This document shows positions 4,601 to 44,983 of a stretch of 64,000 bases of DNA, piece after piece. The notes under the pieces are model-generated. The model saw only the letters and a list, made by a program, of their open reading frames with translations, was not told where the DNA came from and did no database searches. How positions within the stretch are numbered: the stretch's first letter is position 1; each line of letters opens with the position of its first letter. Origin of the DNA: Macrostomum lignano. Lineage: Eukaryota. The position numbers were made by a program, and so were the translations under genes. Where the stretch lies: positions 1-64,000 of the forward strand of contig NIVC01000779.1 of assembly GCA_002269645.1 (NCBI GenBank), written 5' to 3'.

Positions 4601-7600
4601 ATAGTCAATCTGGAGACAAATAACCAACTGCAGCCTGACGAAAAAAGGTAAAGTGTAAAAAGTTACCCAGATTTTTGCAAAAAACGTTACCTGAAAATTT
4701 TCTATAAAATATGTTGTGAAACTTGATAAAAACTGCGGTCTCTGTTAAAAAAGCTAATAAATAAAAATGTACTAGTAAAATGTGATCTTAATTTTTATTT
4801 CTGGCTGAACCAGTAAAAAGCAAGGTAAGACTTTACCCAAAAAAACTTACCCGTAATTACCAGGTCCTTACCTGTAATTACCCAAACAAATAATGCTGCA
4901 ATATTGTTTATTTGTTTATGCTTTTAAGGCATCTATCCTTAAGTAAGCAGTAAAAGTTGGCAATAAGAAGTCGAAGTACTCCCACTTTTGTTTAAATTTA
5001 TTGTGGTTTTTGAAAACTAGCACCGAATTAAATGTTCAAAGACCTTCAGGACCTCCAGAAGAATTTTAGTGCCTAAATGCAATCATAAAAATGGACTTTT
5101 TTCCCTAGTGTTCTTTTCTGTCTCTCTCAATGACTCTGTGCTTGTACTAGCTAGAGATATACAAAATAAATATTATGCATTTGACTGTATTGTATTATAT
5201 TATCTAGGTTTAGAATTTTCACCAAGCATACTCCTTTGCCTGGTGAAACCAATAAGTATATTTGTTTGGTTTGAAAATTAAGGTACATAGATAAAGGTTT
5301 ATTACCTCTTTTCAATAGCTTCTTGCATCTCTTATTACTATAAACAACAAAACCATTTGCAATGGTACCTTGGTTACCTAACATAACTATTTTGTTAAGA
5401 AAGTCTATACAGTATTCTATATTCTATATATTCTATATAGTACTCTATACAATAAGTTTTAAGCATTTTTAGCTAGGATCAATCTAAGTACTTACAGTAC
5501 TGGGAGGAATATTTTCTATCTATATTTACTCATAAATTATTTGTTCCTACCTGTTTGAAAGATTTAACATTCAATTAACCCTTTGATATATGAGCTAAGC
5601 ATATAAGAAACTAATCTAAAATAGGAAAAATTTAAATGCACATTGAAATTCTAGATATATCATATATTCCATTGTTACCAGTTTAATTTTGTTCTTTTCT
5701 AGCTTCTAACTTTAAATTTAACTCCAACTCTAACTTCTAATAAGGATAATAATAAGTTATAACATTAAACTATTTATCATTTAGCCTTATTCAAATAAAT
5801 GAAAATATTAGAATCCCAATTCTTTACATAGTCTAAAAAGCAACATTAAATTTTATGCTTGTAAAACTTTGGTTGCACAAACCTTTATTAATTTTGAAAT
5901 AGCATTTAGTTAGCTTTTGAATAATTTTCTGTTTTCATGTTCCCACTTGACTGATGGTTCTGGGGGTCTGCTAACTCTATCTTGGTATCAAAAGTCACAA
6001 CTAGTAGGCTTTTTTATAGAATTTTCCTTCTACAAATAGCATCTAACACACATCCCTATCTCTCCCTTCCTTCTTTTGGATCTCAACATAAAAACGTTGA
6101 CACAAAATTTATGAAAGCTTGCTATCTTACATTGCTGTTCAAAATCCAAGGCTTTCAAAGTTCAATGGAGAAAGCCCTCTTTTTTGGCCTTAGACTTCTT
6201 TATTCGAAATTGGCAGACTCAGGCGCATTTGTTACTTTCTTTTCATGCATCAAAGAGTTGCTTTGTCCAAATCCGGAGACAAATAGACTAGTCTTTGTTT
6301 TAGATGAGTGCTGTTCAATCGATTATTCTCTATGCACTGTTTTTGCTGACCACTATTTTCACTTTCTTGGTAGAGAACATTTTATGTTTAACTTTGAAGA
6401 ACAGGCACGCAAAGCCAGTTTGAATTTGTCGATTTCTGCAGAGCAAACAGACTGCAATGTCAGCCATGCAATGGGATGTGTTTGGACAACTGGGTCTTTT
6501 AAGCCAGGCAGACTTGGAAAGTTTTGATGCAATATTGTTGGAGATAAGCAAAAACTGGTCTGAACATGGAACATTTGGTAAAATGATAGCGTACTACATT
6601 CAGGTGCATATATACAAAAGACAAAAATAGTGGCTTTATTAAAGGATTTGTTAATCTCTACTTTCCCTGTTCCATAGTAGTAAAAAGGCATCTAAAAATT
6701 AAATATCTTCATGACCACATTGACAACATACATTAAATTGAAAGGTATACATGTAAGGGTGCAGGCACTGTCTATCCATGTTTCAATGATGCAGAATTTT
6801 TTATTATAAACATTTTCCCTTCACAGAATTCAGTATATTACGTCTTCCTAACATCCTGTAGGACAAGGCTGAAAAATTAAAGCAGAAGGCTAGCAACTTC
6901 AAACTGGCCCTCACCAGTATTGATTCATCAAGGCAACAATCTCAAGAGAGACTTAATTGGGAAATCAAGGCATTCTGAACTCGTCAATATCATTGCCTGC
7001 TGAGCAACACTCTGGTGGAATTCAAATCTTGTGTTCAGTTCGAGCTTAAGGCTGAGGAAGATGCCCTTCATGGAGTTGGTGACTACCATCTGCAACGAGG
7101 TTGGAGCTCGCACCTCGTTGCTAATGAAGATTAGCTGCATTTTTCTCCTGAGGAGAGAGCCAGTTGATAAAAACTATTCCTTGAACGACATAAGTAGTCT
7201 TTAAATGAAAATTTGTAGACACCTTAAAAATGCATTCATTCATTATGGAGAATAGAAGTGGAAGAGTTAAATTTACAGAATGAGACAAATGATTGAAATG
7301 ATACAATTGATGTTTACTGGTACCCTCGTAGCTTAATTTTTTAGTTCTGGTTTATCGTAGTTAAGCGAATATGACATAAACAATGAATAAGGGCTTATCA
7401 TTTCAACAGTTTATTCCTATTTTGAACTCACCATACTAGTGGTCTAGACAAGGGCCGTATCCAGATTTTTTGATGGGAGATTTATTTATTGTTTAGGGTG
7501 CCAGACACAGAGAATTGGTACTATGCTTGAATGAAGTTGAGGGTACATATATCCAAATCCTTCTTCGTCACAACCCCTTGTCGAGACCCATTTATACGGC

Positions 7601-8161
7601 TGTAATAAGTGAGTACATATTTTAAATTTAAGCTTCCGCGTTAAGAATTCAGTTTTGTCCCGGCAGCGGCAACACATGGGATGAAAAAAATCCCTCTCGC
7701 TTATGTTGACCCCCTCAAAAGCAGATAGGAGAAACTCTGGTCAGACCCGATGACATGCTCTTGGAAGTTAGGCCATGGGAGAATGATCATCCACTTATTG
7801 TGGCCTTTCCGTCTGCTGGGTGCAAAGGGCAGATGTGCAGGGCATGCTTGTGTCCTATTGTTACTACTTCTAAAATACTGCCACATTGTTCTGTTGTTGC
7901 TCATCTCGAACAGCATTTCCACTTGAGGCTGACCCAAGGCAGCAGCGACAAGCAGCATCTACATATCACTGCTGCAATGCGGAAAACATTTTACCACCTC
8001 TGCGCAAAGTGCCTCGTAAGGCGATTTGGACAGAAATTTTTCAGACGATGCGCGTTGAGTTTAGGCCAGATGCTGGGAAAGAATTTTCTAGTGTTAAAGC
8101 CGCATTCAATATTCATCATCCAGACCTATTGTAGATAGTCACTGAGTCCGATTCTACACTT

Positions 8162-8376: not shown

Positions 8377-9242
8377 CTACCTTTAGTCAAAGATTTCAAC
8401 ATTACAACCATTCACTTGTGTGATGACGTATTTGCGATTATCTTGTACTCATATGATATATACGACAGACTACACTTTGATCAATTGTTTATCATGTGTG
8501 AAAAGTTAGTCAGATTCCTATAATAAGTTAGTGATTCTTTTTATACGCTACCTGAAGTTTTCTAGTACCCAAATGCCAATGCCAAAAAATCATATAGTTG
8601 GATACAGTTCCATTTTGATTTAAGACAATTTGTTGTTTCAACTGCCATCTCTAAGACCTATGACATCTAGCTTTCGCAAATTGTTACCTTGAAAGAAGGT
8701 TTTGTGTTTGCATTTTACAAATCAGTTGACCATTCAAACAGAATTTTTTGTGCAGCTATTTATTTCTCCCAACCTTTAAAACATTTATTTTATTTAACAT
8801 AATGCATAAAATGTCATTCCGTCTTACTGTTGTAAAGGAAGCAAAAAAGTCATTTGTTTGATTTTTATGGCAGCTTATTAGCCAATTTTAAGTAGAAAGG
8901 TACATTATAGCAAAGCTTTGCTTTCCTGACTTATGTCCACTCATAATTTGAGTATTGTAGGAGTCTACTGGAAGTCTGGCCTGTTGATTTTTTGTTTTTG
9001 TTTTTTGTTTTGTGATGAATTTCTTTTTATGAGGGATGTCCAAAAAGTAGTCATATCTTTGACCACAGACAAATCTGAAATGGCTATAGACATAGAAATT
9101 GAAAACCCATTTTTTTGCTTGCCAGTGTACTTGTATGTCTATTTAAGCTGCCATTTTAGTTGTGTGGTAACAGTTTGGGTATCCTAAAGAATAATCAGTT
9201 TTACTCAGCGATTACTTTTTGGACACCCCTCATAGCACAGCG

Positions 9243-9650: not shown

Positions 9651-11518
9651 AAGAGGGTGGGGGTTCAACTAGAGGACATAGTAGGGCTAAAAGGGAAGAA
9701 AAGGTACTAAAAGAGGATGGAGGCTAGAGGGTAGGAAGATAAGGCTAAAAGAGAAAATATGGGGTTGGAAAAGAGAAAAAGTAAAGGCTAAAAAGGAAGA
9801 TGGGGTAAGGCTAGAGAAGACAGTGGTACAACAAGGGAGAGAGGGTGGTCATCCCCCCTTAGGCAGAGACTGGATCAAAGGGGAGACCAAGCAATTTTTT
9901 GCCAAAAACAAAGCCACTTCTTTATCTGTCTCCTGGGCCTTTACCTTTTAGAATCTCACTTTTCAAAAAATTTTATTGGGAAATGTTGCATTATTGGGAA
10001 AAGAGAATAGGCGCTTGAGGGAAAAAGTTAAAGGCTAGATTAGAAGAAAAAGTCAAGGCTAGAAGTTTATTATAACTTTTTATATATTGGCAATACATAG
10101 CTAATAGCTACTAGCTAGTCTATAGATTTTTCTATAGTTATAATTGTTAAGGAAAATTATTTTTAAATGTTTATAAAATTTTATAGTAACATTTATTAGG
10201 ACTATCATTTGGTTCAAATAAATTTCAACCTTGAAGGTGTCTAATAATAGTTAGATGAAATTTATTAGCAACTCAAATAAATAACTAGGCTTAGGCCTAA
10301 CACTTCATATTGATATTGACTTGTTAAAAATATGATAGTTTAAATATTATTTTTAATTATATTAATATAGGCCTAAATAAATTGGATTTACTATTGTAAA
10401 TATATTGAAATCTATGTAGAATTTCCATACAATACAGCATGCTCTTATCTTATTATGATTTAGGTATATTTCTACTTTAGATGTTCAAAAGACCATTTGT
10501 TGAAATATTTTAATGTAAATATATTATAAGATATAATATATAGGCCGGCATAGTTCTAGTTCTAGTTTACTGCGTTAAATTATTTTGCCTTCTATTCAAG
10601 GGTAGGGGGGTTGGAATATAACAAAGTAAACTAGAACTATGCTTATAGGCCTGCTTAGGCCTAATTAAAAAAGGAGTAAATTAATTTTAGAATCACAGAG
10701 AAAAGACACTATTATTATAATTATTAATATTATATTTAGAACACATTTTGATATAACATAAAACTAGGCCTATCTAGATATATAATGGGTATAATATAAT
10801 TACAAAAAAATAATCAATGAAATATAAAACTTTGTATTAGTTAAGTCTAGGTCTAAGAAATATAATAATAACTAGGTAGTTTTGATCTATTACCACTGGC
10901 ACTGTTATCATTACAGGCCTAGAAAGCTAATTAGGCTAAATAAGCAGTTGCATGTTTGCCCAAGAGACTAAACCATTTGAATTCATAGTAGTAGGGCCTT
11001 TGAGTTTAAATTCATTTAAATAATAAAAAATGGTTTGGAACTTTGGTGGTTATGTAAATTTCAAAGAAGTCTAGCTAAAGACAAAGTCTAAAGAGCAATA
11101 AATTATAAATAAATCTGTAAAAAATTGGCAATAGGCCCCTATTTAGCTAGTGGTAAAATTAAAGATTTAGGCCTATTTTAGGTCCAAAGTCAGTCCAACA
11201 ACATGAATAGGTCCATACCATAGGCATAGCCATAGGATAGAGGATATAGATATTATGCAAATTAAACTACATTACTGCATATAATAGAATTAGAATAGGT
11301 CTAGGCTAATGCCAAATTATAATATTAATAGGCCTATGAGTATGACTAGGTGAGGTGGGCAACTTCGTAGACTATTAATACATAGGTTATTAGCTAGCCT
11401 AGCCCTACATTTTTGCTAGGTAGAATGGAATTTTAGCTAGTAAGCTAGCCAGCATGGAATTATACAGTTTATAGATAGTTTCGTAACTAGCTCTCTAGCT
11501 TTTTTCTAAGAAATAATA

Positions 11519-14881: not shown

Positions 14882-17254
14882 TAAGCGCAATTTACAACTT
14901 CATACTAAATGCTAAAATAATTTATTACGTCTATTTTACTGATTCAGTGCGTGAAAATAATTTTCAGATTTTCAAAACGATATAAGTGAAACTTTGTTTT
15001 TCTATGTTTCCTAAAACTTAATTTTACTTTAACCATATTTTAAATGCTTTATACTACATTCTAAGAAAATTATTCAAACTTACTACTACTACTACAAAAA
15101 TGAATGCCTACTAAGAAAATGAAAGCCATAAAAATGAATACCATGAAAACTGCAACTGCTAGAGTTAGGCCTAGTTGGCAATGTTGTATTGATAATATCT
15201 TAGGCCTATCCTTAGGCCTATCAGAGCTTCTCAGCAAGCAGTTTTGGCACACCTACTGGCTTAGCCAGATAATTTTTATTTATGGTGACACTTTGCAAAT
15301 AAAATGCATCATTATACTTAATGTACTAATACTAGGTCAAAATGAGGCAAAAATTAACTGGCTGAATTTCAATCAAAATCTAAGTGGAATTGGTTCTACT
15401 TAGGCCTATTATTATATTAGTTCTATTACTAGCCTAGTTCCGCGCGCTTGTATGCCTGCTCAGTGCTCAGGGGAGTTGGCGGAATGGGCAGTAATGCCTC
15501 TCGCTGGTTATGTGTTGATGTTGCTTAAAGTGCACCAGGGTGCACACACCCCCTGCCTCTAATAAAAAATAGAATTGGTGGTACTATAAATTGGGTGAAA
15601 GTTCTAAGATGTATGCAAGGTGATTTTTGATTTGCCTAGCATGTTGTTTCATGAGTGTAATATTAATATATGCATATGCTGCATATTATTATGCATGTTA
15701 TTCTGCAGTCTTCTGCACAATTTTATGTATCTTATTCCGCACATTTTCTGCATATCTACTTTTTAAATATATGAAAAAATATAGTAATAAAAATATGTTT
15801 TAATATATAATTACTAATAGTAGTAATAGGCCTATGTAACATGACAAAGCTACAAATCTATCTATAAATGGCAGTTCTCTTAATTCAACTTAGGCCTACT
15901 AATAACTGCTTTGTTTCTTTGATTTAAATTTGCTTATTTGTGTATTTTGTTTCATTTTTTGCTAATTAATTATCTGATGTAGGTTTTCAAACACTATAGA
16001 GTCTATAGTATGTTTTGTTCAAGTTTTTTAACCATTACATTAGTGTGATCTTTTCATTGTTGATATTGATAAGTAGTCACTTTTCTCAATTTTTTTCTCT
16101 ATCCTCTTTGCAATGTTGCCTCTGCATACAACTCATTTCTAACTCAATTTATAACTTTGCAATTATAGTAGGCCCTACTCTGTTGCCAAATAGCTAAAAT
16201 AATTAGAGCCTAGAGCCAAATGCCAAAGCTAACAGGGAGTATTAAAAATCCCTTGTTATTACTTTTTAGAAAATGTACCATAAGTCTATCATTATCAAAA
16301 GTATTTAGCTTTTTTAAAATGTTTATATAACTTTAACATCAATTTTTAGTATATTGGAGTGTTATATTTGTGACAAAGTGAACAATAATATAGTTATAAA
16401 GTATGCTATTGCTGAGAATGTATAATTTATTTTTATTTAATTGACAGCCATTTTACAATCAAAAGAGGCAGGCTTTTGTAGTATTTAATGTATAATATAA
16501 TGAAGGAATATCAAGAAGGGCCTTTAGTCTAGCATGTAAAAGATTAAGTTTTTGCAGTATAGACTGTAGTGTATGATTAGTCATAGGACAATAATTGTGC
16601 TTCAAAATAATACATTTTTAAGATACAATGAAAACAAACTTAAGTAATGATTAGATTAGCTATGAATAGATCAGATTAATTAATTAAGATTACATTGAAA
16701 AGTCATAAATATCAATGTTACACTTGAATAATCTATTAAGTATTGGACAGACAGAATTTGACACTGTTATACCTGTCTCTCTTCTTGAAAAATGGCAAGC
16801 TCGAATGTAGAAGCAGTGAAGCACCCAATTCTACTTAGATAATATTGATCAAATGTTCAAGTAAGGCTTTAAAAATATGCGAACAGTAAAAAGCACCAAG
16901 TGTAAATGCAAGATTATTATAGTTCAAGTCATGCATTTAGACTATTAATATTTGGTAGAATAAAACATTGATTAGCAAATAATTAATCATTGCAAAATTT
17001 TCAATAAGATTATTGGCTAGTCAAAATCAGCACAAACACAAATTGCCAACTACTATAAAGTGAGAATAATAATTATATAATACATAGATAGGTTGATAAA
17101 AATAATAGGAGAATTCAGCACATGGGAAGACACTACCGATGCAACAGAGTTGAGAAGGCAAAAATGATACAGAATACATCTGCTGCAGAGTGCAGCCTCC
17201 AATAGGTCATTTTTATTTGATCTGAGAAAGGCTTAGAGGTGAACCATTTGAGAG

Positions 17255-17495
17255 CACAAGAAATGCCTGTAGACAAATTGCCTGTCAAGATTTGCCTTCA
17301 GGAGATTTGCTTGCCAAGAGTTGCCTATTAAGATTTGCCCACAGTGCATTTTGCCACAAGTAAATTGCCTGCTGAGTTTTGCCTATAATGCTTTTTCCTA
17401 CATGCGGGCAAAATGCAATGCGGGCAAATCTCAGTAGGAAAAGCTTGGCAGACAAATCTTGATGGATAATTTGTTTGTGGGCAATTCTCATAGAC
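17255..17495. mobile_element. Foldback/MITE-like element with ATTTGCC/GGCAAAT subterminal repeats
   Basis: GTAGACAAATTGCCTGTCAAGATTTG (~17270) is inverted relative to CAAATCTTGATGGATAATTTGTTTG (~17455); a second right-end copy CAAATCTTGATGAGCAATTTGTCTAC lies at ~18065. Confidence 0.5.
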
Positions 17496-19774
17496 TTTAA
17501 CCATTCCATGGCCTAACTTGTTATGTTTGAATTGGGTTTCAATGATTTGTTATATATTTATACTAGCATACTGCATGTTAACAAGTTAGCACAGTAGAAT
17601 CCCATACAATAGAAATAACCCCAATGTTGTACGATGAAAGATGAGTTGGTAGATGATGCAATCAGACTGAGAGTGAGTGACAATTAAATGTGTGATGCAT
17701 AGCATACTTTAAATTTACCCCCAAGCACTGGTGTGCGCCTGCCATAACACCCCCTCCCTACATGGGATTCTGAATCATATGTCAAGTTCAAAAGTTAATT
17801 CAAGCTCAGTTGTTGACTCTTGCCTCAATCTGGATACCGCATTGGTGGCCGACACACATGGTTCAATCTCCATGGCATCGGCTAGGCGTCCAGTGGTTGG
17901 CAGCAGGACTAGCATTCTGCCTGGCTAGTTCAGTTAGGTCCATAGTGGTCCCCAGGCCTTTATCATCGCTGCTTGCAGTGTCACGACCCTCTTGCTCAGT
18001 CAGGATGCAGCGACATAGATGCCAACGCTTGCCATTCTCAAGTAGACAAAAGATCAAGACAAAACAAATCTTGATGAGCAATTTGTCTACAAGCAATTCT
18101 CATGGACCCAAACCATTCCATGGCCTATATGGTCTAGGAGCAAAATGTCTATGGCTGAAACAATGTATGCGTAAAACAACTGGTTAACATAAATAATGAA
18201 TTATATATTATATAAAAATTTAGTTATCTACTAAAATATGCAATTAAAAAGATAGTTTAACTTATTCTCTTATATTTTTCTAATTTAAATCTTATAACAA
18301 TTATCAAATTTAGAAATTCAGAAAAAGAACTTTGAAATATAGATATATCCACATATATAGATATATGTGGAAATTGCAATGAAAGTATATATTCATTTAA
18401 AATATAAAAGTAGCCTTGACTCGTTTATATAATTTGTTTTAATTAACCTGTTCTTTCAACTATATAGCTAACTCTTCTTATAACATAACAACCTCAAATA
18501 TTATGCTTGACTATAGATATGTTTTGTGCATAGTGTAGGAAAGGCCATAGGATTTAGGAAAATGTTTTTTTTTCATTGAAAATTCAATAAACATTTAACC
18601 TAGAGCAAAGCAAAGCAGGGCAAGATGGGGCAAGGATAGGTCAAGGCAGGGCAAAGCAAGGCAGGTCTACTAGGTCCAAGACAGTGGGATATAGGGAATA
18701 GCAAAGTGGTTGACTAGACTGGCATGCTAGAACCAAGCCATGTTGCTTATTTGTTGGCTAATCTTATAATATGGATCTGGATAAAAATGACTAAATGAAT
18801 AAATTGGACCTTAGGGCAAGTCAGAAATTGTAACTAGGCCTTTTTCAAGACATCAAGGTTAATTTTTAGTCTGATTTACAAGGAATTGGGGCATTGGGGC
18901 AGATTTTGAGTTTTGGGACATCAAGGCAGAAACTTTTTTGGTCTTAAATATATTCCAAGGCATGTATGCCATGATCTGGGCTATAGGCCCTATTATAATG
19001 GTTCCTAAAGATTTTCCTAGGTGATTTTGGCAAGAGGTTTTGACAATTGCAACAGGATCTATCAAAGCAGGTTTTATTGATAAAACTTGCAATGGTAACT
19101 CAATGACAATCAATGGCAATGGCAACTAAGGAGTTTTGAAAGTAGGGACTACTTAAAGTAGTTCTGCATTATTGTACTTTTAATCTCCTATTCTCCTTAC
19201 AATCTGCTAATAGCTTTTGTTTATATCCCTGCAGCCTTAGCCTTCTATTCACTAGCCTGCATGTTTAAAAGAGTACTAAATCAGAGCAGGACAACTGGGT
19301 TATGATCTTCAACTGACAAATATCTTAGCTACAGATATTACTACTTGCAAATGAATGATTGAATTATTGCAAAGCAGGATCAGGATCCTGGTGGTCAATT
19401 TTGGGATTTTTGAATCCTATACAATTGTGATCCTGGGTTTAGGATTATTATTAGGGATTTTTTTGTTTATTCCATAAACAGCTCGTAATTTGTTTTTTGT
19501 TTTTTAACTGCCTTTGTTTTTTATAAAAAATACTCAAAATTTGTTCAAAATTTGTTATGTATATATATATTTCACCTGTCTTTTGCATGCTAATCTCAAA
19601 AGTTTATTGTAAATTGGCTCAGCTGGTATCAGAAATCATGTAAACAAATGCCTGCATCACAATCATCATCAGCAGCATACTACTGTTAACTCATAGTAGT
19701 TGAAAGCGCTAATCAAGTGGATTTCTAATTGTCTTCATTAAATTTTATTAGCCATTAGCAGAGTCCAGTCCCAC

Positions 19775-20224
19775 ATGCTTCGGTCTATCCGACTACTTCA
19801 CCGCGGCTCATCGATGGAGGCGACCTCATCGCCGCCTCGGCCTCTCCTGACCTCCATGGTGAAGAATGGCATACTGATCCTAGTGTTCTATGGCTTCTCC
19901 ATCACATTGACATTCTGCAATAAGAAGTACATCACAATGTATCCGTATCCACTGTCCATGACTATCTGCCATCTGTTAGTGAAGTTCTGCTTGGCTTGGC
20001 TGCTCCGCTCCCTGCTGCAATGGTGGCGCCAGACGCCACGGCCCGAGCTGCCTTGGCGACCGTATATTAAGCGGGTAGCGCTGACTGGCGTGGCCGGCTC
20101 GTTAGACATTGGCCTGTCTAATTGGAGCTTCGAGTTCATCTCGATATCGCTGTACACGATGACTAAGTCTAGCGCTGTCGTGTTCATTCTATTGTTTGCC
20201 ATTGTCTTTCGAATTGAAGAGCGG
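19775..20224 (+). CDS. SLC35C2: SLC35C2-like nucleotide-sugar transporter (TPT/DMT family), coding exon 1
   Basis: FYGFSITLTFCNK...YPLSMTICHL...DIGLSNWSFEFISISLYTMTKSSAVVFILLFAIVFRIEE; ends at phase-0 GTGAGT donor (20225); AG acceptor at 19760-19761 just upstream of the ATG. Confidence 0.92.
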
Positions 20225-20544
20225 GTGAGTTCGATTGAGCTTCTTCTGTTAACTAATTGGCTTATTAAACTTCTAGATTATGAATACTGATCCAGTAGCG
20301 TTTCCCAATTGCAGTGAGGTAGATATTATCGAGTATGCAATTAATATTCAATTAAAGGCAGGTAAAAAAGGAATTAACCGCTTTTGTGTTTAATTTTTTT
20401 CATATTATTACCTGGTGTGATTTGTGTTTTAATGTCTGCCCATACTTTATAATAATGAAAAACTAATTGAATTCGAAACAGGCTCACAAGTATCTTTGTT
20501 GAGAGCATCTTAGCGTATAGGTTTTGAATATTGCGAGAAGAAAG

Positions 20545-21225: not shown

Positions 21226-21689
21226 TGATTGTGCTGTTGCTAACGTTCTTTAGTTTAAGTAAAAATTGAGTACAGTGGAAAACTTTCTCTTTAAATTCTA
21301 ATCATAATAGTCTGCTTTTTTGTTACTGCTTTTGTCAACCTCAGCATAAAACCCTGAGAAGTAAACTAGGCGGTAAGTTACAATTAATGATATATTCTTT
21401 ACTACATAGATAGATAGATTGCTGGTATATTAAAGTAGGGCATTAGTATGGTTATTGTTTTCATCAAACCTTTGCCTTGTTCCACTAAACAGTTGTGCGC
21501 ATACAAGCATAAAAAAGATTTGGTTCCTGCATTAAAGAATCGAAACTAATCCAAGCCAGTCGCAAGCTTTCGCGCGCTTAGTTGAGAAAACCTGCATTCA
21601 ATTGAAGAATGGTGGCTTCAAGTGATCAGTCGCTGATTAAACAAACGGGATATCGTCAACAGAGCCAACCCCTGTCATCTTCACAGTGG

Positions 21690-22090
21690 CGCTTTCATAA
21701 ATCCGAAATTTCACAATGCTGGAACTTCACAGTCTCGAAATTTTATAAACTTGAATTTTCACAACGCCAGGATTTCACATCAAAAATAAAAAAATCAGCA
21801 TACTTAAAAAACTCGAATTTTCACAAACCCCAAATTTCAGAAAGTCGAATAGTCTCCTATCTCTCCAGTGTATTTCGACGTTGTGAACTTTATGGTTTGT
21901 GAAAATTCGGGTTTGTGACGACCCACCTCTCCAGTGTATTTTGACATTGTGAACTTTCGGGTTTGTGAAGACTCACCTTTCCAGTGTATTTCGACATTGT
22001 TAACTTTCTGGTTTGTGAAAATTCGGGTTTGTTAAGACTCCCATCTCTTCAGTGTATTTCGACATTGTGAACTTTCGGGTTTGTGAAGCG
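21690..22090. mobile_element. Palindromic foldback element built of short subrepeats
   Basis: GAATTTTCACAAACCCCAAATTTCAGAAAGTCGAATA (~21815-21851) is inverted relative to TATTTCGACGTTGTGAACTTTATGGTTTGTGAAAATTC (~21871-21908); the right arm is reiterated about 4 times. Confidence 0.5.
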
Positions 22091-23124
22091 ACTCCTTTCA
22101 CAGACACCCTGCCCCAGCGTTGCAGCCGATCAGCTCTCACTGTCACCTTGAACCTGCGCCTGATCATATACTCCTACACTGTCTTCAGTCTGATGTCTAG
22201 CATCTTACCTCTCTCGATAGTCGCAATGACCAACGCGTATACTTCACATTCGAAATTCTGTGGCAGGTATGAGTGGATTTTGACAGCGCTAGTCTTGAAT
22301 CGTGCGAAAATTTTCTCAAATCGAATGCAAGTTTTCTCAACTAGCTATACTAGCGGAATTATTTTCCTCTATATGAGATGGATGCAGCTAGACTTTGAGC
22401 CAATATAGCGGTCAATGATGACTGATATGTGCATTTGTTATATAATTTTTCCTGTGTACATTTTCTAATAAATCTGTGCTTGTATCCCTGTGAGTAGACT
22501 GGTCCAGTTGCGATTTTTGCTGTTTAGGAACAGAAATACAGCCGATTTTCGCCCTAATTACCCTAATCTCCTACTCAAGCTGAATAAAATTTTTATTGCT
22601 CACTTAGAAACCTTGGTAGACAAAAATTTGATGCTACTGTTACATTTGGTAGAGCTGCTTATTTAGCACACGAGAAATTATTACAGATGAAATGCTTTTA
22701 TGGTAGTTATGGTTTAGACAGAGTAGACAGTCTGACTTCTCGCGCCACGACCCCCTGAATCTGATTTGATTGGACGAGAGATGGGGTGGATGAACTGATT
22801 GGTCACTTAGACAGAGAGTATGATGTACATTGATTGCGCGTGGCGAGGGACAGTTGAATTGACCATTAGATATTAGACTAGCAAAATCTAGTGCTCCCCC
22901 TTCTGGGCGCCCAATAATCAAGGGACAAAAATTATTAACGTGATGAATCCTGTTTTCTTTGACACCTAAACAATTCCCCCCCCGTAAGCCTTGACCTCTC
23001 AGCAATTCCTGAGTCAAGTACGAGTAAGCCTTGACTTGCGTCAGAGCGCCCTCCTGAGAATGCTGATTTCACTATACCAGCAACTGAAAGCAATATTGCA
23101 ACACGCCGCCTCATCCAAACGCAG

Positions 23125-23553
23125 CGCTGGTCTCTGATAGCCGTAGTGCTGCTCATCTCAACCGGGCTGCTGTTATTCACTTACAAGAGTACGCAGTTTC
23201 ACACTGGCGGATTCCTGCTCGTACTATTGGCCTCGTTTGTGTCCGGCGCCAGGTGGACAGCGGCTCAGGTTGCTACGCAACGGGCAGAATTAGGCTTAGC
23301 CAATCCCGTTGACATGATCTATCATGTGCAGCCCTGGATGATCCTGGCACTGCTGCCTCTGGCCGTGGTGTTTGAAGGCGTCGAAGTCGGCACCACGGCG
23401 AACGCTTTTCGGGCCGACTCCGCCGAGGCGGCTCTGCGCACCCTGGGTGCCCTCACTGGCGGAGCCCTGCTGGCCTTCGGGCTGGAGTTCTCCGAGTACC
23501 TGCTCATCCACCACACCAGCTCGCTCACGCTGTCCGTGTCCGGCATATTCAAG
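23125..23553 (+). CDS. SLC35C2: SLC35C2-like, coding exon 2
   Basis: CAG acceptor, phase 0; RWSLIAVVLLISTGLLLFTYKSTQF..GGFLLVLLASFVSGARW...ELGLANPVDMIYHVQP...SSLTLSVSGIFK followed by GTAATC donor. Confidence 0.95.
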
Positions 23554-23565
23554 GTAATCATATTC

Positions 23566-23962
23566 ACTGACTGACTGACTGACTGACTGACTGACTGACT
23601 GACTGACTGACTGACTGACTGACTGACTGACTGACTGACTGACTGACTGACTGACTGACTGACTGACTGACTGACTGACTGACTGACTGACTGACTGACT
23701 GACTGACTGACTGACTGACTGACTGACTGACTGACTGACTGACTGACTGACTGACTGACTGACTGACTGACTGACTGACTGACTGACTGACTGACTGACT
23801 GACTGACTGACTGACTGACTGACTGACTGACTGACTGACTGACTGACTGACTGACTGACTGACTGACTGACTGACTGACTGACTGACTGACTGACTGACT
23901 GACTGACTGACTGACTGACTGACTGACTGACTGACTGACTGACTGACTGACTGACTGACTGA
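23566..23962. repeat. (GACT)n microsatellite, ~99 units, in SLC35C2 intron 2
   Basis: Perfect tetranucleotide tract starting 12 nt after the donor. Confidence 0.99.
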
Positions 23963-28379: not shown

Positions 28380-29648
28380 CTGGCCAGGGAGTTGCAATTG
28401 AAGTAAACATTGTCAAGTCACATTCACATTTTTCAGGATGCTTATCATGTACGCAAATCTATATTTTAATAACTTAGTTCATCACAAATGTCACTTGCAG
28501 CAATGCACTTATCTACTCTTCTTCAGCAGCAAAGCCACCAATTTTTTGCATTTATAATAGTAAAATAGAAATATTATTTGTTTTTTCCTGATATTTAAAG
28601 TTGCTAAAGCTGCTAAAATTGTCTTTGCCTTTCCACAATTAGCATCAATGTATGCACTGTTTCAACAACCCCAGGCTGATTTAGATTAGAAATTATTGAA
28701 AACTAAATAAATTTAAGACATAGAAAACTTCCCTTTCTGTGTACAAGTTTGAAATGCTTATAACTATTGGCAGACACATGGCATTGCAATAAAATTTTAT
28801 GCTTCAATAAAACAAATTTGAAAGAGAATATAAATAAAAATTTAACTTATTTAATAAACAATCCTATTGTCCACAATGAATACAGTCCAACAAACTTCAC
28901 AACACCCCTTGTATAAATCAATGCTACTAAAAGATTTTGAATATAAGTAGCTCTCAATTTTCTTACCAATTATTCTATTTACTTTTCAACCAAGTTATAC
29001 ATATGGCATTATGGTATAACTTTATCTTTTAACTTTAATTTGACTATTCTGTTAACTTTATTCATCAAATTGTCTATATAATTTTTTCAACTATTCTATC
29101 AACTTTTCCATTAACTATTTTATAAACTTTTATGTTTACTGAATAGAGAGTGATTTTTGCACAATTCATTTTTGTAACTTTTTGATACATGCTTTGATTG
29201 AGAAATCAAGCATGTTAAAATTTGCAGCCAAACATATTTACAAAAAATAAAAATCATTTTAGTAGAATAAAATAAATTTAAAAACTGAAAATTGATAGTG
29301 TTGGGCACTAGTCAGTTAATAAGTGTTAATATGTTAAGTTATACTTATATATAGATATATGCTTATTTATTTAAAGATAAAAAATATCAAAAAAAATTTT
29401 TATGCAATTGGTTTTAGCATGCCAAAACCAATACAGCCAATTATAAAAATATTATAATAATTCTAATATGCTTAATTTGTTAAATAGATTTAATTATATG
29501 AGAAACACTATTTTTAAAAATATATTTTTAGGATTCTAAGAACTTAAATTAGGTCTAGGCCTACACTACCTAGACTGCTAGACATGAGCCTAAAATATAT
29601 TTTATTTTATTTTATAAAATTAATTTTATTATAATTTATAACACTTAC

Positions 29649-30326: not shown

Positions 30327-31873
30327 AGAAGATTCAATTAATTAAAAAAATTTATTAAAAACAGTCAGTTCTGGTGAAGTTTCTTTGTTGGAACGCTAAA
30401 GTTAAATGGATTACGGGACGATTATCCTCTAAATCTTGTTTGCAAATACAAACGTCGTGTGCGCACACGTGCACGTTCTATGACCAGATTTTCGCGCTTT
30501 AAGATTTTTCAAAAAATTAAATAAGTTTAAGGTTTAACAAATAAAGCAAAGTATTACCAATACTGCAAATGTTAAAGTTTTTTATTTAATTTAATTTTCT
30601 AAGCAAAATCATAAATAAAAATTACTTTTTGCTCCAAGTCACTCACAAAAAGTGTAAAAATGCGAGTTTGCACTAATTCAAGTTGCTCTAAAAAGTTCTA
30701 AAAAATTAAATCTTAAGCAGTTTGTGAAATGAAATGTAGATTTCCTTTTCTTCTAAATTAGTTTTTTATGTTTAGGGCTTAATTCTGTCTCAAAAAGCTG
30801 CCACTAAAGTTTTCACAGGCATGTCTATTGGAAACTTAGTTAGGAAAGTAGTTACTTGTCTAAAATTAATTTCCTTGGATTATCTTCTTAGCAATCTTAG
30901 AATTAGAAATTAGTAATTCTTAGAATTATAGGGTCTGGGTCTGGGTATGAGTCTGAATATAGATCTAAGAGGTCTACAAACTTTGCTAGCCAAGAAAGTT
31001 GCCAGCTGAAGGTTGTTAGCCAAGAAATTTTCCTGCCAGAAGCAGAATGTTGCTAGCCATAAAGTTGCTAATTGAGAAAACTTGTGGGCCAATTGTATAT
31101 ATTCTGCAATAAAGTTCAGAATTGAGAATTTTAGCAGTTATCTAATCGAATAAATGATTTTAAAATTAGCCCCTTAGAAAAAAATATGAAGTATGGGCCT
31201 AGTGTGCAGAATAATGTGTGGAATAACATGCAAAATAACATACATAATGTTACACTCACTAGACTAAGATATACCCTTGTCTTGTTTTTAAATATATATT
31301 CAGTTGCTAAAAGTTAAATAACATAAAGGTTTTTTATAGAGCTTAGTCTAGTAAAAAATGAATCAGTAGGCCTATTCTGCATGTTATTCTAGATCTTATT
31401 TTATACTTTATTCTGCAAATCTACTTTATTACTTTATTTATTATGCAATACTTGGTTTCCTAGCTTTATGTTTGGTACTAAAAACTACTAAACCAGGCTA
31501 CTAAAGTATTGAAAACAAATCCTATCTACCAAATCCCATATACTAAATTGTTTTGTTGGTATCTATGCCAGTTCTCTCAATTCAACTTACTAACTGCTCT
31601 GTTTCTTTGATTTAAATTTGTTTGTTTGTATATTTTATTTCATTTTTGTTAGTTAATTAACGGACATAGGTTTTTCAAATATTATAGTATGTATGATAGT
31701 AATTTTTTAATATTATAGTAAGTTTTTTAGCCAATACATTAGTTTTTGTTTATTTAATGTTAGGAATTATTATTTATATTAATTAAAGCATAAACTTTTT
31801 TCAAGCTCTTGTTATTTCTAATATTGTGCAGTCTCAGTCTTAGCCTCAGCCTCTAGACAATGCCAATAAGTAG

Positions 31874-32219: not shown

Positions 32220-32699
32220 CAGGGACTAGGCCTACTCAAATATTGAGATGGGAAACTAGGCAAATCATGGCAAAGTTTTTACGAGGCTGTTTAAATCTAT
32301 GGCCGCGCCAATGCAGCAGTAGCTATTTCAATATTTCAATAAATCTTCAATAAATTTTATATTTTATTATATCTGTGAATTTTAATATTCAGGTGCTTTT
32401 ATGAACTATGTATATTTACTTGAAAGTCATTGGAAAAATAGTTCATAAAACATATAAGATAACATGAAGGACTATTTGTAAGGAGTGAATAGTGAACATG
32501 GAACAGACAAACAATAAAAAGTTAACTCACACAGTGGATATGAGTATTAAAATATGGGAAGTTTGAACATATATATACACAGATAGGAAAATGAACAGAT
32601 GCAAAAAAATATTTAACAGATTTAAGCATTGAATAGTTAGGAATACTCAATAGATGTAAACTTGTCTGTTGCGCAATGTCATGCACTTCTAAGTTTTTT

Positions 32700-35600
32700 G
32701 TCTTTCTCTCTTGAACAGTGACAGATAATGGAGCCACCTTCAATGATCTCTAAACAAGTCTCTTAAAGAATGTGTTTGTTGCTCTTCGTGCCACACCTTA
32801 GATGTTGAAGTCAATGTAATGGAAGAAATTTTCAGCTATAGTTGTAAATAGTGTCTACACTCTCGTTGCACAAATGGGTAAGTGGGCAGTGAAACATGTG
32901 TAGCAAAGAGTTAGAAATGAAAACAGCCACTCTGGGGGTGCCGTAGCTTTCCCTGCAATAGTAACTGAGTAAATTCACTGGCTTCTTCTTTTGTGCTATC
33001 CACAAATTCTCTGTCAATGCCTTCAATTTTCTCCTTGACACAGATACAGCCAAAAAAAGATCCATTTAGTATTCGTATCATCACTACTTCAGCACACCAA
33101 AAATACAATTAGTCGAGGGCTATATACTAATTAGATACAGCAAGAAAAGAAATCTTACTAGCGATGAAATAAAGGGAAGCCTTTTCTGAGAGAGTGATGC
33201 CATCCAGTGTTGCCACCACTGCGATTTTTTATTGCTCAGCGATTTTTTATCGCTCAGCAATAATTTTGTCTATTTTGCTCATTTCCTGCGATTTTTCGTG
33301 AACACCAGTCCTTTCAACTTTTTTTCAAGTACTGTGTTTCATTTTGTGCTCAATTAAAGTGTCATGAATGTCATCAATATAGCGTGAGGCTGTGCAAGCC
33401 TCCGGTTTTGAAGCTCGGCAAAAGGAGATTGAGCATGCTGCGGTTGAGCGAGCACTGAAGAAGGCTGCTGACGAGGCAAGTTACGTCACTTGCAGTTGAG
33501 GTGAGAGAGAAGTCGCCTCTTGGTAGGGTGGCGGTTTCGACTGTTGCTGAGTGTATGTATGCCTGTCTTCCCTTAAGAAAATGCTTGTGTTGTATGACTA
33601 CTTCACTGATTTGGCATAAATGAGAGTTGCATGCAGTTATTGCAAATTGTAGTAGTTTTTTTAGTCAAATAGAAGATGGAATTAGAAATGGAAAGCTAAA
33701 AAAGAAAGTTGTTTTTGCATCCTGGCACCTTTTTTCAATGACAAAAAAGAAATTTGTTCCTGCAATTTTTTTCTTATCCTGCAATAATTTCTTTGGTTGC
33801 TGTAGTGGCAACACTGATACCATCAGTATTTGATGGCCAGCTGTCTAACACTGTTAGCTCCTCTTCAGAAAGTTCCGCGGTGCAACATGGACTCTTATTA
33901 TGGTGATAGTTGTCCAATTCAAGACTTGCAAAAATTTTTCATGCGTCTTAGTTGCACAATCAGTAGGACTTGCTTGACAGATATAAAATAATTGCTACTG
34001 CTCATCTGCCAATAGACTCCAAACTCTCCTTCTAGAGAATCGCTCTGAAAATTCCCTAGTAGAACATAGGAAATATCAGGATCCGAGAGCAGATCTTTGC
34101 AAAAGTCCACCATGCCACGCAAAGAATACAAAAAAGCCAACTTAGTCTCAGCTGTGAGACATCGGTAGCAGGCGTGCCCTTTTCCACACTGTGACTATTC
34201 AATAGACTTGGCAAAATCTTTTAAAAACCTGGTGTTGTTGTCATGAACAGAAAAAATAGGTCTCCTGCTGGGATCATTAAATCAAACATATAGATCTGGA
34301 TTCTTGCAGTTCACTATGTTCCACAACTTTAAAATGGTCTCCACAAAGCTAGCAGTTTCACAATGACTGTCGCACTTAAGTGCAGCTGCCATTTTTTCAT
34401 CAAAAACTTGCAAAGCTAGACTTACTTTTGTTTTTTGAATGCTAGATGGGTAGCAAGCTTTGAAGGTTAGACCAGATCGCTTTACAATATGATTTTCTTT
34501 GCTTTTGTATACTCTGATCAAATTGTTCCACTTGCCGATATAGTCTGTCCATTGCTTGGTACACGGAGTATGAGTATTCCATCTTTTTCTGTTTGCCAAT
34601 TGTTTCTAAGGCATTTCAACAGATGCACTGAGTTGTTTATCATATAGAAAATGGACTCCTGTGAGGGATCTCTGCCAATCCAGGGCTTGATGTGAAGGTT
34701 GTCACAAAAAAAGAGAAAAACACTTTCAATTCATAGGATGGTTATTGCAAACCAATGCAATTATGCAACCGCCTTGATTGTTGATGATGCCTATGCAGTG
34801 ACTTAGCTGATGTCGAAGAAAGTCTGCAGCCAGAAGAAAAATGGGCACTAATTGCATGACAAATGGCTTTCCACCAAAAAGAGGCTTTACCATGATGTCT
34901 AGAACTGTTCGTGCAGCCTGACTAGGATTGTTGCTAGCACATCCCATCAGATGTTTGTACCAGTATTGAATAGAAGGTTGTACATACATTTCATCAAACA
35001 TCAGAACGCAATTTTGCTAAGGACCAAAAATCTTTGAAAAACCAATTGATCGCGTAATTTTGAGTACATCATTCTCCGTGCCCACCTCTCCCCTTCCTGC
35101 AAGTTGATGTCGTAGTGTGCGCTGATGAGGCAATGGAATGAGTGTTCTAATATATGAATAGGTGGAGCTACTGATCAGGTAAAGTAAGGCCAACTTCCAG
35201 AATCTGGATCTATAGTGCTATAGTGTTATATTTGCAAGCAGTCGGTGAGTCTAGTGTTAGCTTTAACTCTTCAAGCAAGAATTTAATAGTTGGATTCTTT
35301 AGCATTACGCTGTCAATGGTGAATATGTTGCTTTTCATGAAATACAAAATCTCATTCTCAACTGAAAACTCAGAGTTGTTGCATCATACAATAATTGCAT
35401 CCAGTTGTGACCAAAACTTCAGCGTGGGTTGAAATCCAAGTAGGTCGCAAACACTAATTGGTATGTGCATTATGTAGGCACAAACAGCAAAATTTGGCGA
35501 AATAAATAATCAAACAAGCATGTTGCCATTGGAGTCCAATGAAAACATATATAAATCCTGCTGAAAAAATGTAACCACTAAGGTGTGGCTTTTGACTATT

Positions 35601-36211
35601 TCAGAGTCCTATACAGAGTCACAGAAACCATTCTATGAAGATATGGTGTCGCTCAGCTGAAACTCCTCTAATTCATCTGCTAAGCCACCTTGTGCGTCAG
35701 AGAGAACACCTCTCGTCTTCACATCTCTATTGCATTCTAAAATGTAAAAACATATATGGTGGGATCTTTGAGAAAGTTTAGATTATATGAACTAAATGCT
35801 AAAGTCTAAAGTACAAATAGGTATTCAAAGTAGTCATACCTTGGTTCTGAACCAGGCAAGACGGAGGAACACCATTGAAAATAGAAGGCGGATCCTTTGG
35901 TGTCTCAAATTGTTGCTTTTCACCATTGTTGTGTCCAGTGGCCAGTGTTTGGCGCAGATTCCCATGTGATCTGTTATGGACTGAAAGGCGGAATAAAGGA
36001 AAAAACACTTGCGAATAAAGAAAAAAATTGCATATAATATATTAGCACAATTTACCTTATAGTAAATAGCACCTACCTCTAGGATTTTTGGCAGAGTCTT
36101 TTTCCATCGCTTTTGCTCAACCGAGTCCTTTGGAAACAGATGGACTTTTGTAGCTAATCGTTCGGACTCGTAATTTGACTTGCAGCCAACAATGCTGCAC
36201 TTTCTTGGCAT
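32700..36211 (-). pseudogene. THAP9/P-element transposase pseudogene (THAP domain split by a 96-nt intron at 36076-35981)
   Basis: MPRKCSIVGCKSNY..VHLFPKD...W...ITDHMGICAKHW..PKDPPSIF (THAP); FDEMYVQP..VLDIMVKPLFGG; HLLKCLRNNW; KVSLALQVFDE; YVLLGNFQSDSLEGEFGVYWQMSSSNYFISV; GKLRHP; ARRATNTFFK. Multiple stops and frameshifts. Confidence 0.92.
33205..33816. mobile_element. 612-bp non-autonomous TIR element (hAT- or P-class) nested in the P transposase
   Basis: Perfect 12-bp TIRs CAGTGTTGCCAC / GTGGCAACACTG; 8-bp TSD ATGCCATC (33197-33204) / ATACCATC (33817-33824); subterminal GCGATTTTTT and GCAATTTTT repeats. Confidence 0.9.
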
Positions 36212-36479
36212 TGATGCCAACAACACAAGCAGAAAAATCGAGCTTGTCCTACGTGTCTGCCAGAAACTTAGCTGCTGTAATATAATGCAAGCATCCTTGC
36301 TAGACTGCAGTGGAAATAATGGTATCACAAGCTTCAAATAATAGAAAATAACCATAGACAACAAAGTATCGCTCAATACAAATTAGCCAGCCAGCCTCGT
36401 CAGCTGCTAACAAACCAGCCTTGTAAAAACTTCGCAATGATTTGCCTAGTTTCCTGTCCCAATGTTTGAGTAGTCCCTG

Positions 36480-44938: not shown

Positions 44939-44983
44939 GAAGCCAGTAATCAGTTTCAGCCCTCATTGGACGCCAAATTGCAG

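What the first reader, a model, noticed from the sequence alone, without database searches (positions are those of the whole stretch)
15870..15930. Second, independent GGCCTA insertion seen between paralogous hAT-flank sequences
15872-15930 (CAGTTCTCTTAATTCAACTTA[GGCCTA]CTAATAACTGCTTTGTTTCTTTGATTTAAATTTG) aligns with 31569-31620 (CAGTTCTCTCAATTCAACTTA-CTAACTGCTCTGTTTCTTTGATTTAAATTTG). The same 6 nt are added in the same context (TA^CT) as in the P-element TIR. Two identical insertion events in unrelated sequences within 17 kb argue for a specific, recurrent mutational process.
Basis: seen in the sequence. Interest (0 to 1): 0.75.

Follow-up and report, generated by a model that had tools for sequence, protein, structure and literature searches.

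The report
Transposon excision scars: TA becomes TAGGCCTA
The extra GGCCTA is real and is one of about fifteen identical TAGGCCTA palindromes in this stretch of an animal-like genome; they are most likely the small scars that a cut-and-paste transposon leaves at a TA site when it jumps out again, which is a known and ordinary kind of mutation, here unusually dense and uniform.

Summary
The sequences sit at the stated coordinates. Copies A (15868-16066) and B (31565-31750) are true paralogues: 75% identity, E 4e-29. A reads CAACT-TA-GGCCTA-C-TAA-TAA-CTGC where B reads CAACT-TA-C-TAA-CTGC. The difference is therefore 9 nt (GGCCTA plus a TAA duplication), not 6.

The P-like element (32220-36479, 8-bp TSD TCTCAAYC) shows the same thing. 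Its left TIR is CAGGGAC-TA-GGCCTA-CTC and its right TIR is CAGGGAC-TA-CTC.

TAGGCCTA occurs 15 times against about 1 expected. After masking tandem repeats it is the most over-represented 8-mer in the window. Only these two sites have a paralogue, and in both the paralogue has plain TA.

TA + 4 nt + TA is the form of a Tc1/mariner (Minos-type) excision footprint. A candidate donor lies in the window: a hairpin MITE (17203-17515) and a second end (18127), both ending ...CCATGGCC|TA. A second TA-N4-TA word, TACTCGTA/TACGAGTA, is also enriched (7 vs 0.54).

Best reading: these are recurrent transposon insertion-excision scars. Polarity is inferred; no further family copies could be reached. The "hAT" label is unverified. 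Interest is moderate to low.

The parts
15868..16066 (+). Copy A of a ~190-bp dispersed repeat (family unidentified)
   Evidence: blastn against copy B: 75% identity, E 4e-29. MAFFT alignment A1.
15891..15898 (.). TAGGCCTA in copy A. The extra GGCCTA is 15893-15898 (equivalently TAGGCC at 15891-15896). This is the scar of the finding.
   Evidence: The paralogue has plain TA.
15900..15905 (+). TAATAA: tandem TAA where copy B has a single TAA. This is the other 3 nt of the 9-nt difference.
   Evidence: Read directly.
31565..31750 (+). Copy B of the repeat.
   Evidence: hAT identity not confirmed.
31588..31589 (.). Unoccupied TA in copy B, homologous to the scar site in copy A
32220..36479 (-). 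P-element/THAP9-like transposon with a decayed frame, flanked by the 8-bp TSD TCTCAATC (32212-32219) / TCTCAACC (36480-36487)
   Evidence: THAP domain. TNP-like RNaseH_N and GBD, weak. Homologues at 49-52% identity carrying PF21787. TIR arms. Bounds and TSD.
32227..32234 (.). TAGGCCTA inside the left TIR of the P-like element, 8-15 nt from its tip
36471..36472 (.). Unoccupied TA at the homologous position of the right TIR (CAGGGAC-TA-CTCAAA on the minus strand)
17203..17515 (+). Candidate donor family: a ~310-bp hairpin MITE. Left end TA|GGTCAT (degenerate); right end ...AACCATTCCATGGCC|TA.
   Evidence: Folds as a long hairpin, z -4.6.
18064..18127 (+). Second copy of the same right end, ...AACCATTCCATGGCC|TA. 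Similarity to the first copy stops right after GGCCTA.
   Evidence: 81% identity over 64 nt.
10292..11336 (.). Cluster 1 of TAGGCCTA: 10292, 10368, 10656, 10765, 11168, 11329. It also holds 8 one-mismatch variants and TAGGCCCCTA at 11132. Two sites in the window are nested in an older, mutated copy: TAGGCT-TAGGCCTA at 10286 (this cluster) and TAGGTC-TAGGCCTA at 29550 (outside it).
   Evidence: Not a tandem array.
15166..15834 (.). Cluster 2 of TAGGCCTA: 15166, 15201, 15213, 15401, 15827, then 15891. Sites 15201 and 15213 are one 12-nt tandem duplication.
29556..29563 (.). Isolated TAGGCCTA, abutting TAGGTC
31367..31374 (.). Isolated TAGGCCTA 200 bp left of copy B

Best explanation
TAGGCCTA is the excision scar of a cut-and-paste transposon that integrates at TA, duplicates that TA, and has GGCC (GG...CC) at its tips.

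Proposed mechanism, all steps inferred:
1. The element inserts at a TA, giving TA-[GGCC...GGCC]-TA.
2. When the transposase cuts it out, the staggered cut leaves the element's terminal nucleotides as 3' overhangs on the flanking DNA.
3. GGCC is its own reverse complement. A 4-nt overhang anneals perfectly, or two 2-nt overhangs are filled in and joined. End-joining therefore gives the same product every time, TA-GGCC-TA, a net gain of GGCCTA at a former TA.
4. One such visit hit copy A of the dispersed repeat at 15891. Another hit the left TIR of the P-like element at 32227. About a dozen more hit unique AT-rich DNA between 10 and 32 kb.

Shown: the indels, the over-representation, the clustering, and the presence of a TA-flanked, GGCC-ended MITE.

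Inferred: the direction of change, that this MITE family (or its autonomous partner) is the donor, and the cut geometry.
For: (1) Form. In both comparable pairs the filled site is TA+GGCC+TA and the other copy is plain TA. [quoted passage not shown] A 6-bp footprint is reported for Minos (PMC10992017).

(2) Abundance in unrelated unique DNA. There are 15 sites against 0.98-1.2 expected. After TRF masking it is the top 8-mer of the window, p 3.5e-25 on both-strand counts. The flanks of the sites share no similarity with one another, so it is not a motif carried by one repeat family.

(3) Tight context. 15 of 25 AGGCCT are flanked T..A, p 2e-10.

(4) Candidate donor in the window. Two ends read ...CCATTCCATGGCC|TA, and their similarity stops after the TA. 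A left end reads TA|GGTCAT, with alignable arms and a hairpin fold of z -4.6. It lies between the two clusters.

(5) A second member of the class. Among 136 TA-N4-TA words, the only other strong outlier is TACGAGTA/TACTCGTA, 7 dispersed sites against 0.54, p 1.6e-6. The best TA-N5-TA word is TAGGCCCTA, 3 against 0.27, as expected for occasional imprecise repair.

(6) Other TA-flanked TIR elements exist in the window, so TA-duplicating transposons live in this genome.

(7) A 100-bp MITE with an 8-bp TSD TATAGGCC (10545-10640) has inserted into a decayed scar. The scars therefore span a range of ages.
Against: - Polarity is not demonstrated. There are only two copies of each family and no outgroup.
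- The left tip of the candidate donor is degenerate and its placement is ambiguous: TAGGTCAT at 17203 or TAG at 17234. The chance of a one-mismatch TAGGCCAT within the expected ~80 nt is about 3% (my estimate).
- TA could be part of the element rather than a TSD.
- No Tc1/mariner-type transposase was found in the parts of the window I scanned.
- Scars outnumber resident elements about 7:1. They are packed 6 per kb in two spots, tighter than ordinary local hopping explains.
- The 7-mers TAGGCTA/TAGCCTA expected from a 3-nt stagger are not enriched: 11 against 8.7.
- The composition of the Minos footprint (4 terminal nt + TA) is from my memory of Arca et al. 1997. I did not read it here.
Confidence: 0.6

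Rival explanations
1. TAGGCCTA is ancestral in both transposon families (a motif near their tips). Copy B and the right P TIR each lost GGCCTA by slippage between the two TA repeats that flank it.
For: The octamer contains a 2-nt direct repeat (TA...TA), which could mediate a precise 6-nt deletion. Transposon ends often carry short repeated motifs. The P TIR has a second CTAGGC about 30 nt further in on both arms.
Against: It needs two independent, exactly equal deletions. It also needs the same octamer to be ancestral in two unrelated elements. It does not explain 13 more perfect copies in unrelated unique DNA, the T..A context bias, or the second enriched TA-N4-TA word.
Confidence: 0.12
2. 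TAGGCCTA is a protein-binding palindrome (for example a dimeric factor or insulator site) kept by selection. The two dense clusters upstream of the SLC35C2-like gene would be regulatory modules.
For: It is a perfect 8-bp palindrome. There is strong clustering: 6 sites in 1.3 kb and 6 in 0.85 kb, p 7e-5 and 1e-6 per TA. Fifteen copies are perfect, with no overall excess of one-mismatch copies (19 against 22). The clusters lie 4 and 9 kb upstream of a gene.
Against: Binding sites arise by point substitution, not by a 6-nt insertion at TA seen twice. Two sites lie inside dead transposon ends. Cluster 1 does contain 8 decayed one-mismatch copies, as neutral sequence would. This reading is compatible with scars later being co-opted, but it does not explain their origin.
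Confidence: 0.1
3. These are templated micro-insertions during break repair (polymerase-theta type) or slippage, copying TAGGCC/CTAGGC from a nearby template.
For: A TAGGCCTA lies 64 nt upstream of 15891. A CTAGGC lies 30 nt inside the P TIR. The pairs TAGGCT-TAGGCCTA, TAGGTC-TAGGCCTA and the 12-nt tandem duplication show local copying of the unit.
Against: It presupposes earlier copies, so it does not explain where the motif came from. It does not explain why the product is always bounded by TA. Most sites have no template within 50 nt.
Confidence: 0.07
4. This is an assembly or sequencing artefact, or a chance indel between two old, 75%-identical repeats.
For: The A/B alignment has several other gaps. 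No reads were available to check.
Against: The same octamer appears 15 times against 1 expected, and only in non-coding AT-rich DNA. It matches no systematic error type I know. The one-mismatch decayed copies and a MITE inserted into one of them show the motif has a history in the genome.
Confidence: 0.03

Closest known systems
Tc1/mariner excision footprints (Sleeping Beauty C(A/T)GTA; the Minos 6-bp footprint)
   Same: A TA target is duplicated, and a few terminal nucleotides of the element are retained between the two TAs after end-joining. The net gain is 5-6 bp at a former TA, with one stereotyped product per family (PMC3878927; PMC2874221; PMC10992017).
   Different: The retained letters are GGCC, which is self-complementary. 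Both ends therefore give the same palindromic scar, which may explain its uniformity. No Tc1/mariner transposase or intact autonomous copy was found here. The scar density (15 in 64 kb, 6 per kb locally) and the scar-to-element ratio are far higher than I know to be reported (my knowledge).
Stowaway-type MITEs and their mariner-like partners in plants
   Same: They are short, hairpin-forming, TA-flanked non-autonomous elements. [quoted passage not shown]
   Different: The TIR sequence is different (GGCCATGGAATGG...) and the host is an unidentified, animal-like genome. Only one full copy and one end were seen.
PIF/Harbinger and Tourist/mPing elements
   Same: Their TIRs also begin with GGCC (mPing GGCCAGTCACAATGG, from memory).
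   Different: They duplicate 3 bp (TAA/TTA) and mostly excise precisely (PMC4561436). Here the duplicated unit is TA in both polarised cases, and the flanks of the MITE ends read TAA, TAT and ATA.

Membership tests
Tc1/mariner-type excision footprint | The filled site is the target TA duplicated, with a few nucleotides between; the homologous empty site is a single TA. | tested here: met
   A against B: CAACT-TA-GGCC-TA-C against CAACT-TA-C. P TIRs: GGGAC-TA-GGCC-TA-CTC against GGGAC-TA-CTC.
Tc1/mariner-type excision footprint | The nucleotides between the TAs equal the terminal nucleotides of a TA-flanked element resident in the same genome. | tested here: inconclusive
   Two right ends read ...CCATGGCC|TA. 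The left end, TA|GGTCAT, is degenerate and its placement is ambiguous. Only one family copy and one extra end are available.
Tc1/mariner-type excision footprint | The filled state is derived: the site was first empty, then occupied, then scarred. | not testable with these tools
   There is no third copy or outgroup in the window.
Tc1/mariner-type excision footprint | A DD(E/D) Tc1/mariner/pogo transposase whose element carries the same TIRs. | tested here: not met
   No such domain appeared in the ORFs scanned with Pfam. The scan covered selected ORFs of 75 aa or more in 1-40 kb and a few beyond, so absence from the window is not absence from the genome.
hAT transposon (the label given to the element next to copy B) | hAT transposase / hATC dimerisation domain. 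| tested here: not met
   Pfam gave no hit at E<1 for the 31874-32190 frame or the upstream pieces. The protein search gave no hit at E<1e-3. Only my visual impression of an hATC-like stretch remains.
hAT transposon (the label given to the element next to copy B) | Terminal inverted repeats with an 8-bp TSD. | tested here: not met
   No inverted partner of CAGTTCTCTYAATTCAAC was found at up to 3 mismatches in the window.
P-element / THAP9-like transposon (32220-36479) | THAP DNA-binding domain plus a TNP-like RNase H and GTP-binding insertion domain. | tested here: met
   THAP E 4e-4. PF21787 and PF21788 are weak in the decayed frame. Homologues at 49-52% identity carry PF21787, E 5e-79.
P-element / THAP9-like transposon (32220-36479) | TIRs and an 8-bp target-site duplication. 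| tested here: met
   TIR of about 62-69 nt, 84-89% identical. TSD TCTCAATC/TCTCAACC, 7 of 8.

The most novel reading that the evidence does not exclude
The TAGGCCTA palindromes are not passive scars. They would be products of a self-reinforcing process: each scar, which carries the transposon's tip sequence next to TA, recruits the transposase or a domesticated relative. New insertion-excision cycles would then pile up at the same kilobase, as in the nested TAGGCT-TAGGCCTA and TAGGTC-TAGGCCTA and the 6-per-kb clusters. This would build arrays of identical palindromes that the host may then use as binding sites.
Probability: 0.08. Interest if true: 0.7.

Novelty: new member of a known kind. 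Interest (0 to 1): 0.35.

Why it matters
If the reading holds genome-wide, this genome keeps an unusually clean fossil record of transposon excision. It would be one stereotyped 8-bp palindrome per visit, countable by simple word search and datable by its decay.

That would allow three estimates for a Tc1/mariner-like family: excision rates against insertion rates, target preferences, and hot spots. It would also show how a self-complementary tip (GGCC) makes end-joining deterministic.

For annotation, it warns that recurrent identical micro-insertions between paralogues, and a top-ranked palindromic word, can be transposon scars. They need not be a new mutational mechanism or a regulatory motif.

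Tried and rejected
1. Finding the genome or more family copies.
- The look-up of encoding contigs on four window ORFs found nothing.
- The three protein searches gave only distant hits: SLC35C2-like 44-48%, P-like 49-52%, hAT-like none.
- One metagenome scan with a 21-mer from the repeat returned six chance matches with unrelated flanks.
- Rfam and tRNA scans of the window were empty.
- The organism stays unidentified.

2. Intact donor of the form TAGG...CCTA with 16 or more of 24 matching tips. None was found apart from an internal match inside the P TIR. The donor candidate emerged only from the half-sites.

3. Cluster as a tandem array or a single repeat family. Rejected: TRF finds only trivial microrepeats and one 12-nt duplication, and the site flanks do not match each other.

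4. Footprint from a 3-nt stagger (TAGGCTA/TAGCCTA). Not enriched, 11 against 8.7.

5. hAT or hairpin-type footprint (palindromic copies of the flank). Rejected because GG/CC is absent from the empty sites.

6. PIF/Harbinger donor. Rejected because the duplicated unit is TA, not TWA.

7. P-element or hAT 8-bp TSD equal to TAGGCCTA. Rejected because the empty sites have only TA.

8. Literature search for TAGGCCTA and for the MITE tip found nothing relevant. The review of Minos by Pavlopoulos et al. 2007 is not held.

Full report
**1. The observation**

Copy A (from 15872) reads CAGTTCTCTTAATTCAACTTAGGCCTACTAATAACTGCTTTGTTTCTTTGATTTAAATTTG. Copy B (from 31569) reads CAGTTCTCTCAATTCAACTTACTAACTGCTCTGTTTCTTTGATTTAAATTTG.

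A self-comparison of the window shows that the two are real paralogues: 15868-16044 against 31565-31743, 75% identity, E 4e-29. MAFFT carries the similarity on to about 16066 / 31750.

The copies differ at this spot by 9 nt, not 6. One reading is GGCCTA plus a tandem TAA (A: C-TAA-TAA-CTG; B: C-TAA-CTG). The other, chosen by MAFFT, is one 9-nt gap and one mismatch. Both readings cost two events.

No third copy exists in the window. The 18-mer at the start of the repeat matches only these two places at up to 3 mismatches.

**2. The companion case**

- It has a THAP domain.
- It has weak TNP-like RNase H and GTP-binding-insertion domain matches in a frame broken by stops and shifts.
- Its homologues, at 49-52% identity, carry PF21787.

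Its inverted arms are 32224-32292 and 36413-36481. The 8-bp duplication TCTCAATC / TCTCAACC fixes its tips at 32220 and 36479.

With the tips fixed, the left end is CAGGGAC-TA-GGCCTA-CTCAAAT and the right end, read inwards, is CAGGGAC-TA-CTCAAAC. An ungapped alignment, which MAFFT preferred, would move the left tip 6 nt away from its target-site duplication. The 6-nt indel is therefore the correct reading.

**3. How unusual is the product?**

Both events create the 8-bp palindrome TAGGCCTA.
- It occurs 15 times in the window against 1.03 expected from dinucleotide shuffles; none of 100 shuffles exceeds 4.
- After masking tandem repeats with TRF it is the single most over-represented 8-mer of the window (30 both-strand counts against 1.96 under an order-3 Markov model, p 3.5e-25). 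Homopolymers come next.
- Of 25 AGGCCT hexamers, 15 are flanked by T and A (p 2e-10).
- The flanks of the 15 sites do not resemble each other. Only 15891 and 32227 have any paralogue in the window, and in both the paralogue has a bare TA. Every site that can be polarised against a relative (2 of 2) shows TA against TA-GGCC-TA.

**4. Distribution**

- All 15 sites lie between 10.0 and 32.3 kb (p 7e-6 given where the unmasked TA dinucleotides are).
- Six lie in 10.15-11.45 kb and six in 15.10-15.95 kb (p 7e-5 and 1e-6).
- The clusters are not tandem arrays and do not match each other. Sites 15201 and 15213 are one 12-nt tandem duplication, so there are 14 independent sites.
- One-mismatch variants are not in excess overall (19 against 22 expected). 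However, 8 of the 19 lie in cluster 1.
- At 10286 and 29550 a perfect copy starts on the last TA of a mutated copy: TAGGCT-TAGGCCTA and TAGGTC-TAGGCCTA.
- A 100-bp hairpin MITE with the 8-bp duplication TATAGGCC has inserted into another decayed copy at 10541-10651.

The motif has therefore been arriving over a period of time, and repeatedly at the same places.

**5. What makes TA into TAGGCCTA?**

TA + 4 nt + TA is the anatomy of an excision footprint of a TA-duplicating cut-and-paste transposon. The transposase leaves a few terminal nucleotides of the element as 3' overhangs on the flanks. [quoted passage not shown] A 6-bp footprint is reported for Minos (PMC10992017). That this footprint consists of four terminal nucleotides plus TA is my recollection of Arca et al. 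1997, which I did not read here.

The model predicts a resident element with TA|GG...CC|TA, ideally TA|GGCC...GGCC|TA.
- A blind search for such pairs with matching tips failed.
- Listing the TAGGCC half-sites showed two ends reading ...AACCATTCCATGGCC|TA, at 17515 and 18127. They are 81% identical over 64 nt, with similarity ending right after the TA.
- The first belongs to a ~310-bp element (17203-17515). Its arms align in inverted orientation, and it folds as a long hairpin (z -4.6).
- Its left tip is degenerate. MAFFT places it at TA|GGTCAT (17203), followed by a 29-nt insert. An alternative placement at 17234 is possible.

Because GGCC is self-complementary, a 4-nt overhang from either end pairs perfectly with the other. 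Alternatively, two 2-nt overhangs are filled in and joined. Either way the single product is TAGGCCTA, which would explain the uniformity.

**6. Independent support for the class**

- Among the 136 TA-N4-TA words, the only other strong outlier is TACGAGTA/TACTCGTA: 7 dispersed sites against 0.54, p 1.6e-6. Two of the seven share flanks, so there are perhaps 6 independent sites.
- The best TA-N5-TA word is TAGGCCCTA (3 against 0.27).
- No TA-N2-TA or TA-N3-TA word stands out, and TAGGCTA/TAGCCTA are at expectation. A 3-nt stagger is therefore not indicated.
- Two further TA-flanked TIR elements are present, at 9028-9234 and 21579-22343.

**7. What remains open**

The direction of change is inferred, not shown.
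- I could not obtain further copies of either family. The organism is unidentified.
- Its SLC35C2-like and GT92 genes and its P-like element have only distant relatives in the protein collection.
- No window ORF is on record in the assembly index.
- The one metagenome scan returned chance matches.

The rival that TAGGCCTA is ancestral, with two precise deletions, cannot be excluded. It needs more coincidences and leaves the other 13 sites unexplained.

A selected binding-site palindrome would explain the clustering and the perfection of the copies, but not their arrival as insertions. Scars could of course be co-opted later.

Templated repair could account for the local doublets but not for the origin of the motif.

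The tight clustering and the 7:1 excess of scars over resident elements are the least comfortable facts for the simple scar model.

The 'hAT' label for the neighbour of copy B is not supported by any test I could run.

**8. Verdict**

The best-supported process is an ordinary one: insertion and excision of a Tc1/mariner-like, GGCC-tipped element (confidence about 0.6).

What is noteworthy is the degree: a scar that is the top 8-mer of a 64-kb window. The kind is not new. I rate it a new member of a known kind, interest about 0.35.

Noticed in passing
window 2234, 2921, 23019, 25717, 26844, 49662, 61338: TACTCGTA/TACGAGTA occurs 7 times against 0.54 expected (p 1.6e-6). It is the second strongest TA-N4-TA word, which suggests a second scar type from a CGAG-tipped TA element. 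Sites 26844 and 49662 share the flank TTAAG-TACTCGTA-G. No donor with CGAG tips was found in the window.
   Followed up: partly
window 17203-17515 and 18064-18127; possibly 7767-7790: A hairpin MITE family with tips TA|GGCCATGGAATGGTT and internal (A/G)ATTTGCC repeats. A 14-nt identity (AAGTTAGGCCATGG) at 7765-7778 may be a third, truncated end.
   Followed up: partly
window 10536-10651: A ~100-bp hairpin MITE (TIR GCATAGTTCTAGTTTACT, with a TTCTAG duplication in the left arm) flanked by the 8-bp direct repeat TATAGGCC. It is an element with an 8-bp TSD (hAT/P type) that landed in a decayed TAGGCC site.
   Followed up: no
window 9028-9234 and 21579-22343: Two more TA-flanked elements with 15 of 16 matching tips: TGAGGGRTGTCCAAAA and GTTGAGAAAACYTGCA. 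The second lies in the intron of the SLC35C2-like gene.
   Followed up: no
window 32212-36487: A P-element/THAP9-like transposon of 4260 bp with ~65-nt TIRs and an 8-bp TSD. It is inserted in the reading frame of an older, unidentifiable decayed element (minus strand, 31874-32190 and 36490-39000). Its own frame is broken by several stops and frameshifts.
   Followed up: yes
window 23566-23962 and 58895-59288: Two ~395-bp arrays of a 4-nt repeat (GTCA)n, 99% complementary to each other, in inverted orientation 35 kb apart. The first abuts an exon-like ORF of the SLC35C2-like gene.
   Followed up: no
window 40000-64000: The right-hand 24 kb is GC-richer (44-49%) and consists largely of different minisatellites, with periods of 12, 16, 20, 24, 30, 31, 32, 36, 39 and 41 nt. 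A GT92 glycosyltransferase exon lies at 44927-45622, between two arrays.
   Followed up: no
window 19775-20290 and 23146-23574: Two exon-like ORFs of a triose-phosphate-transporter family / SLC35C2-like gene. The best relatives are only 44-48% identical (vertebrates, Drosophila), so the host is a eukaryote poorly represented in the protein collection.
   Followed up: partly
window about 3500-4700 (ORF containing WHWIYTEAGHGKGAADGVGAAVKRR): A long ORF with a GHGKG..DG.G..KR motif that I associate from memory with transposon-derived proteins. There was no Pfam hit.
   Followed up: no
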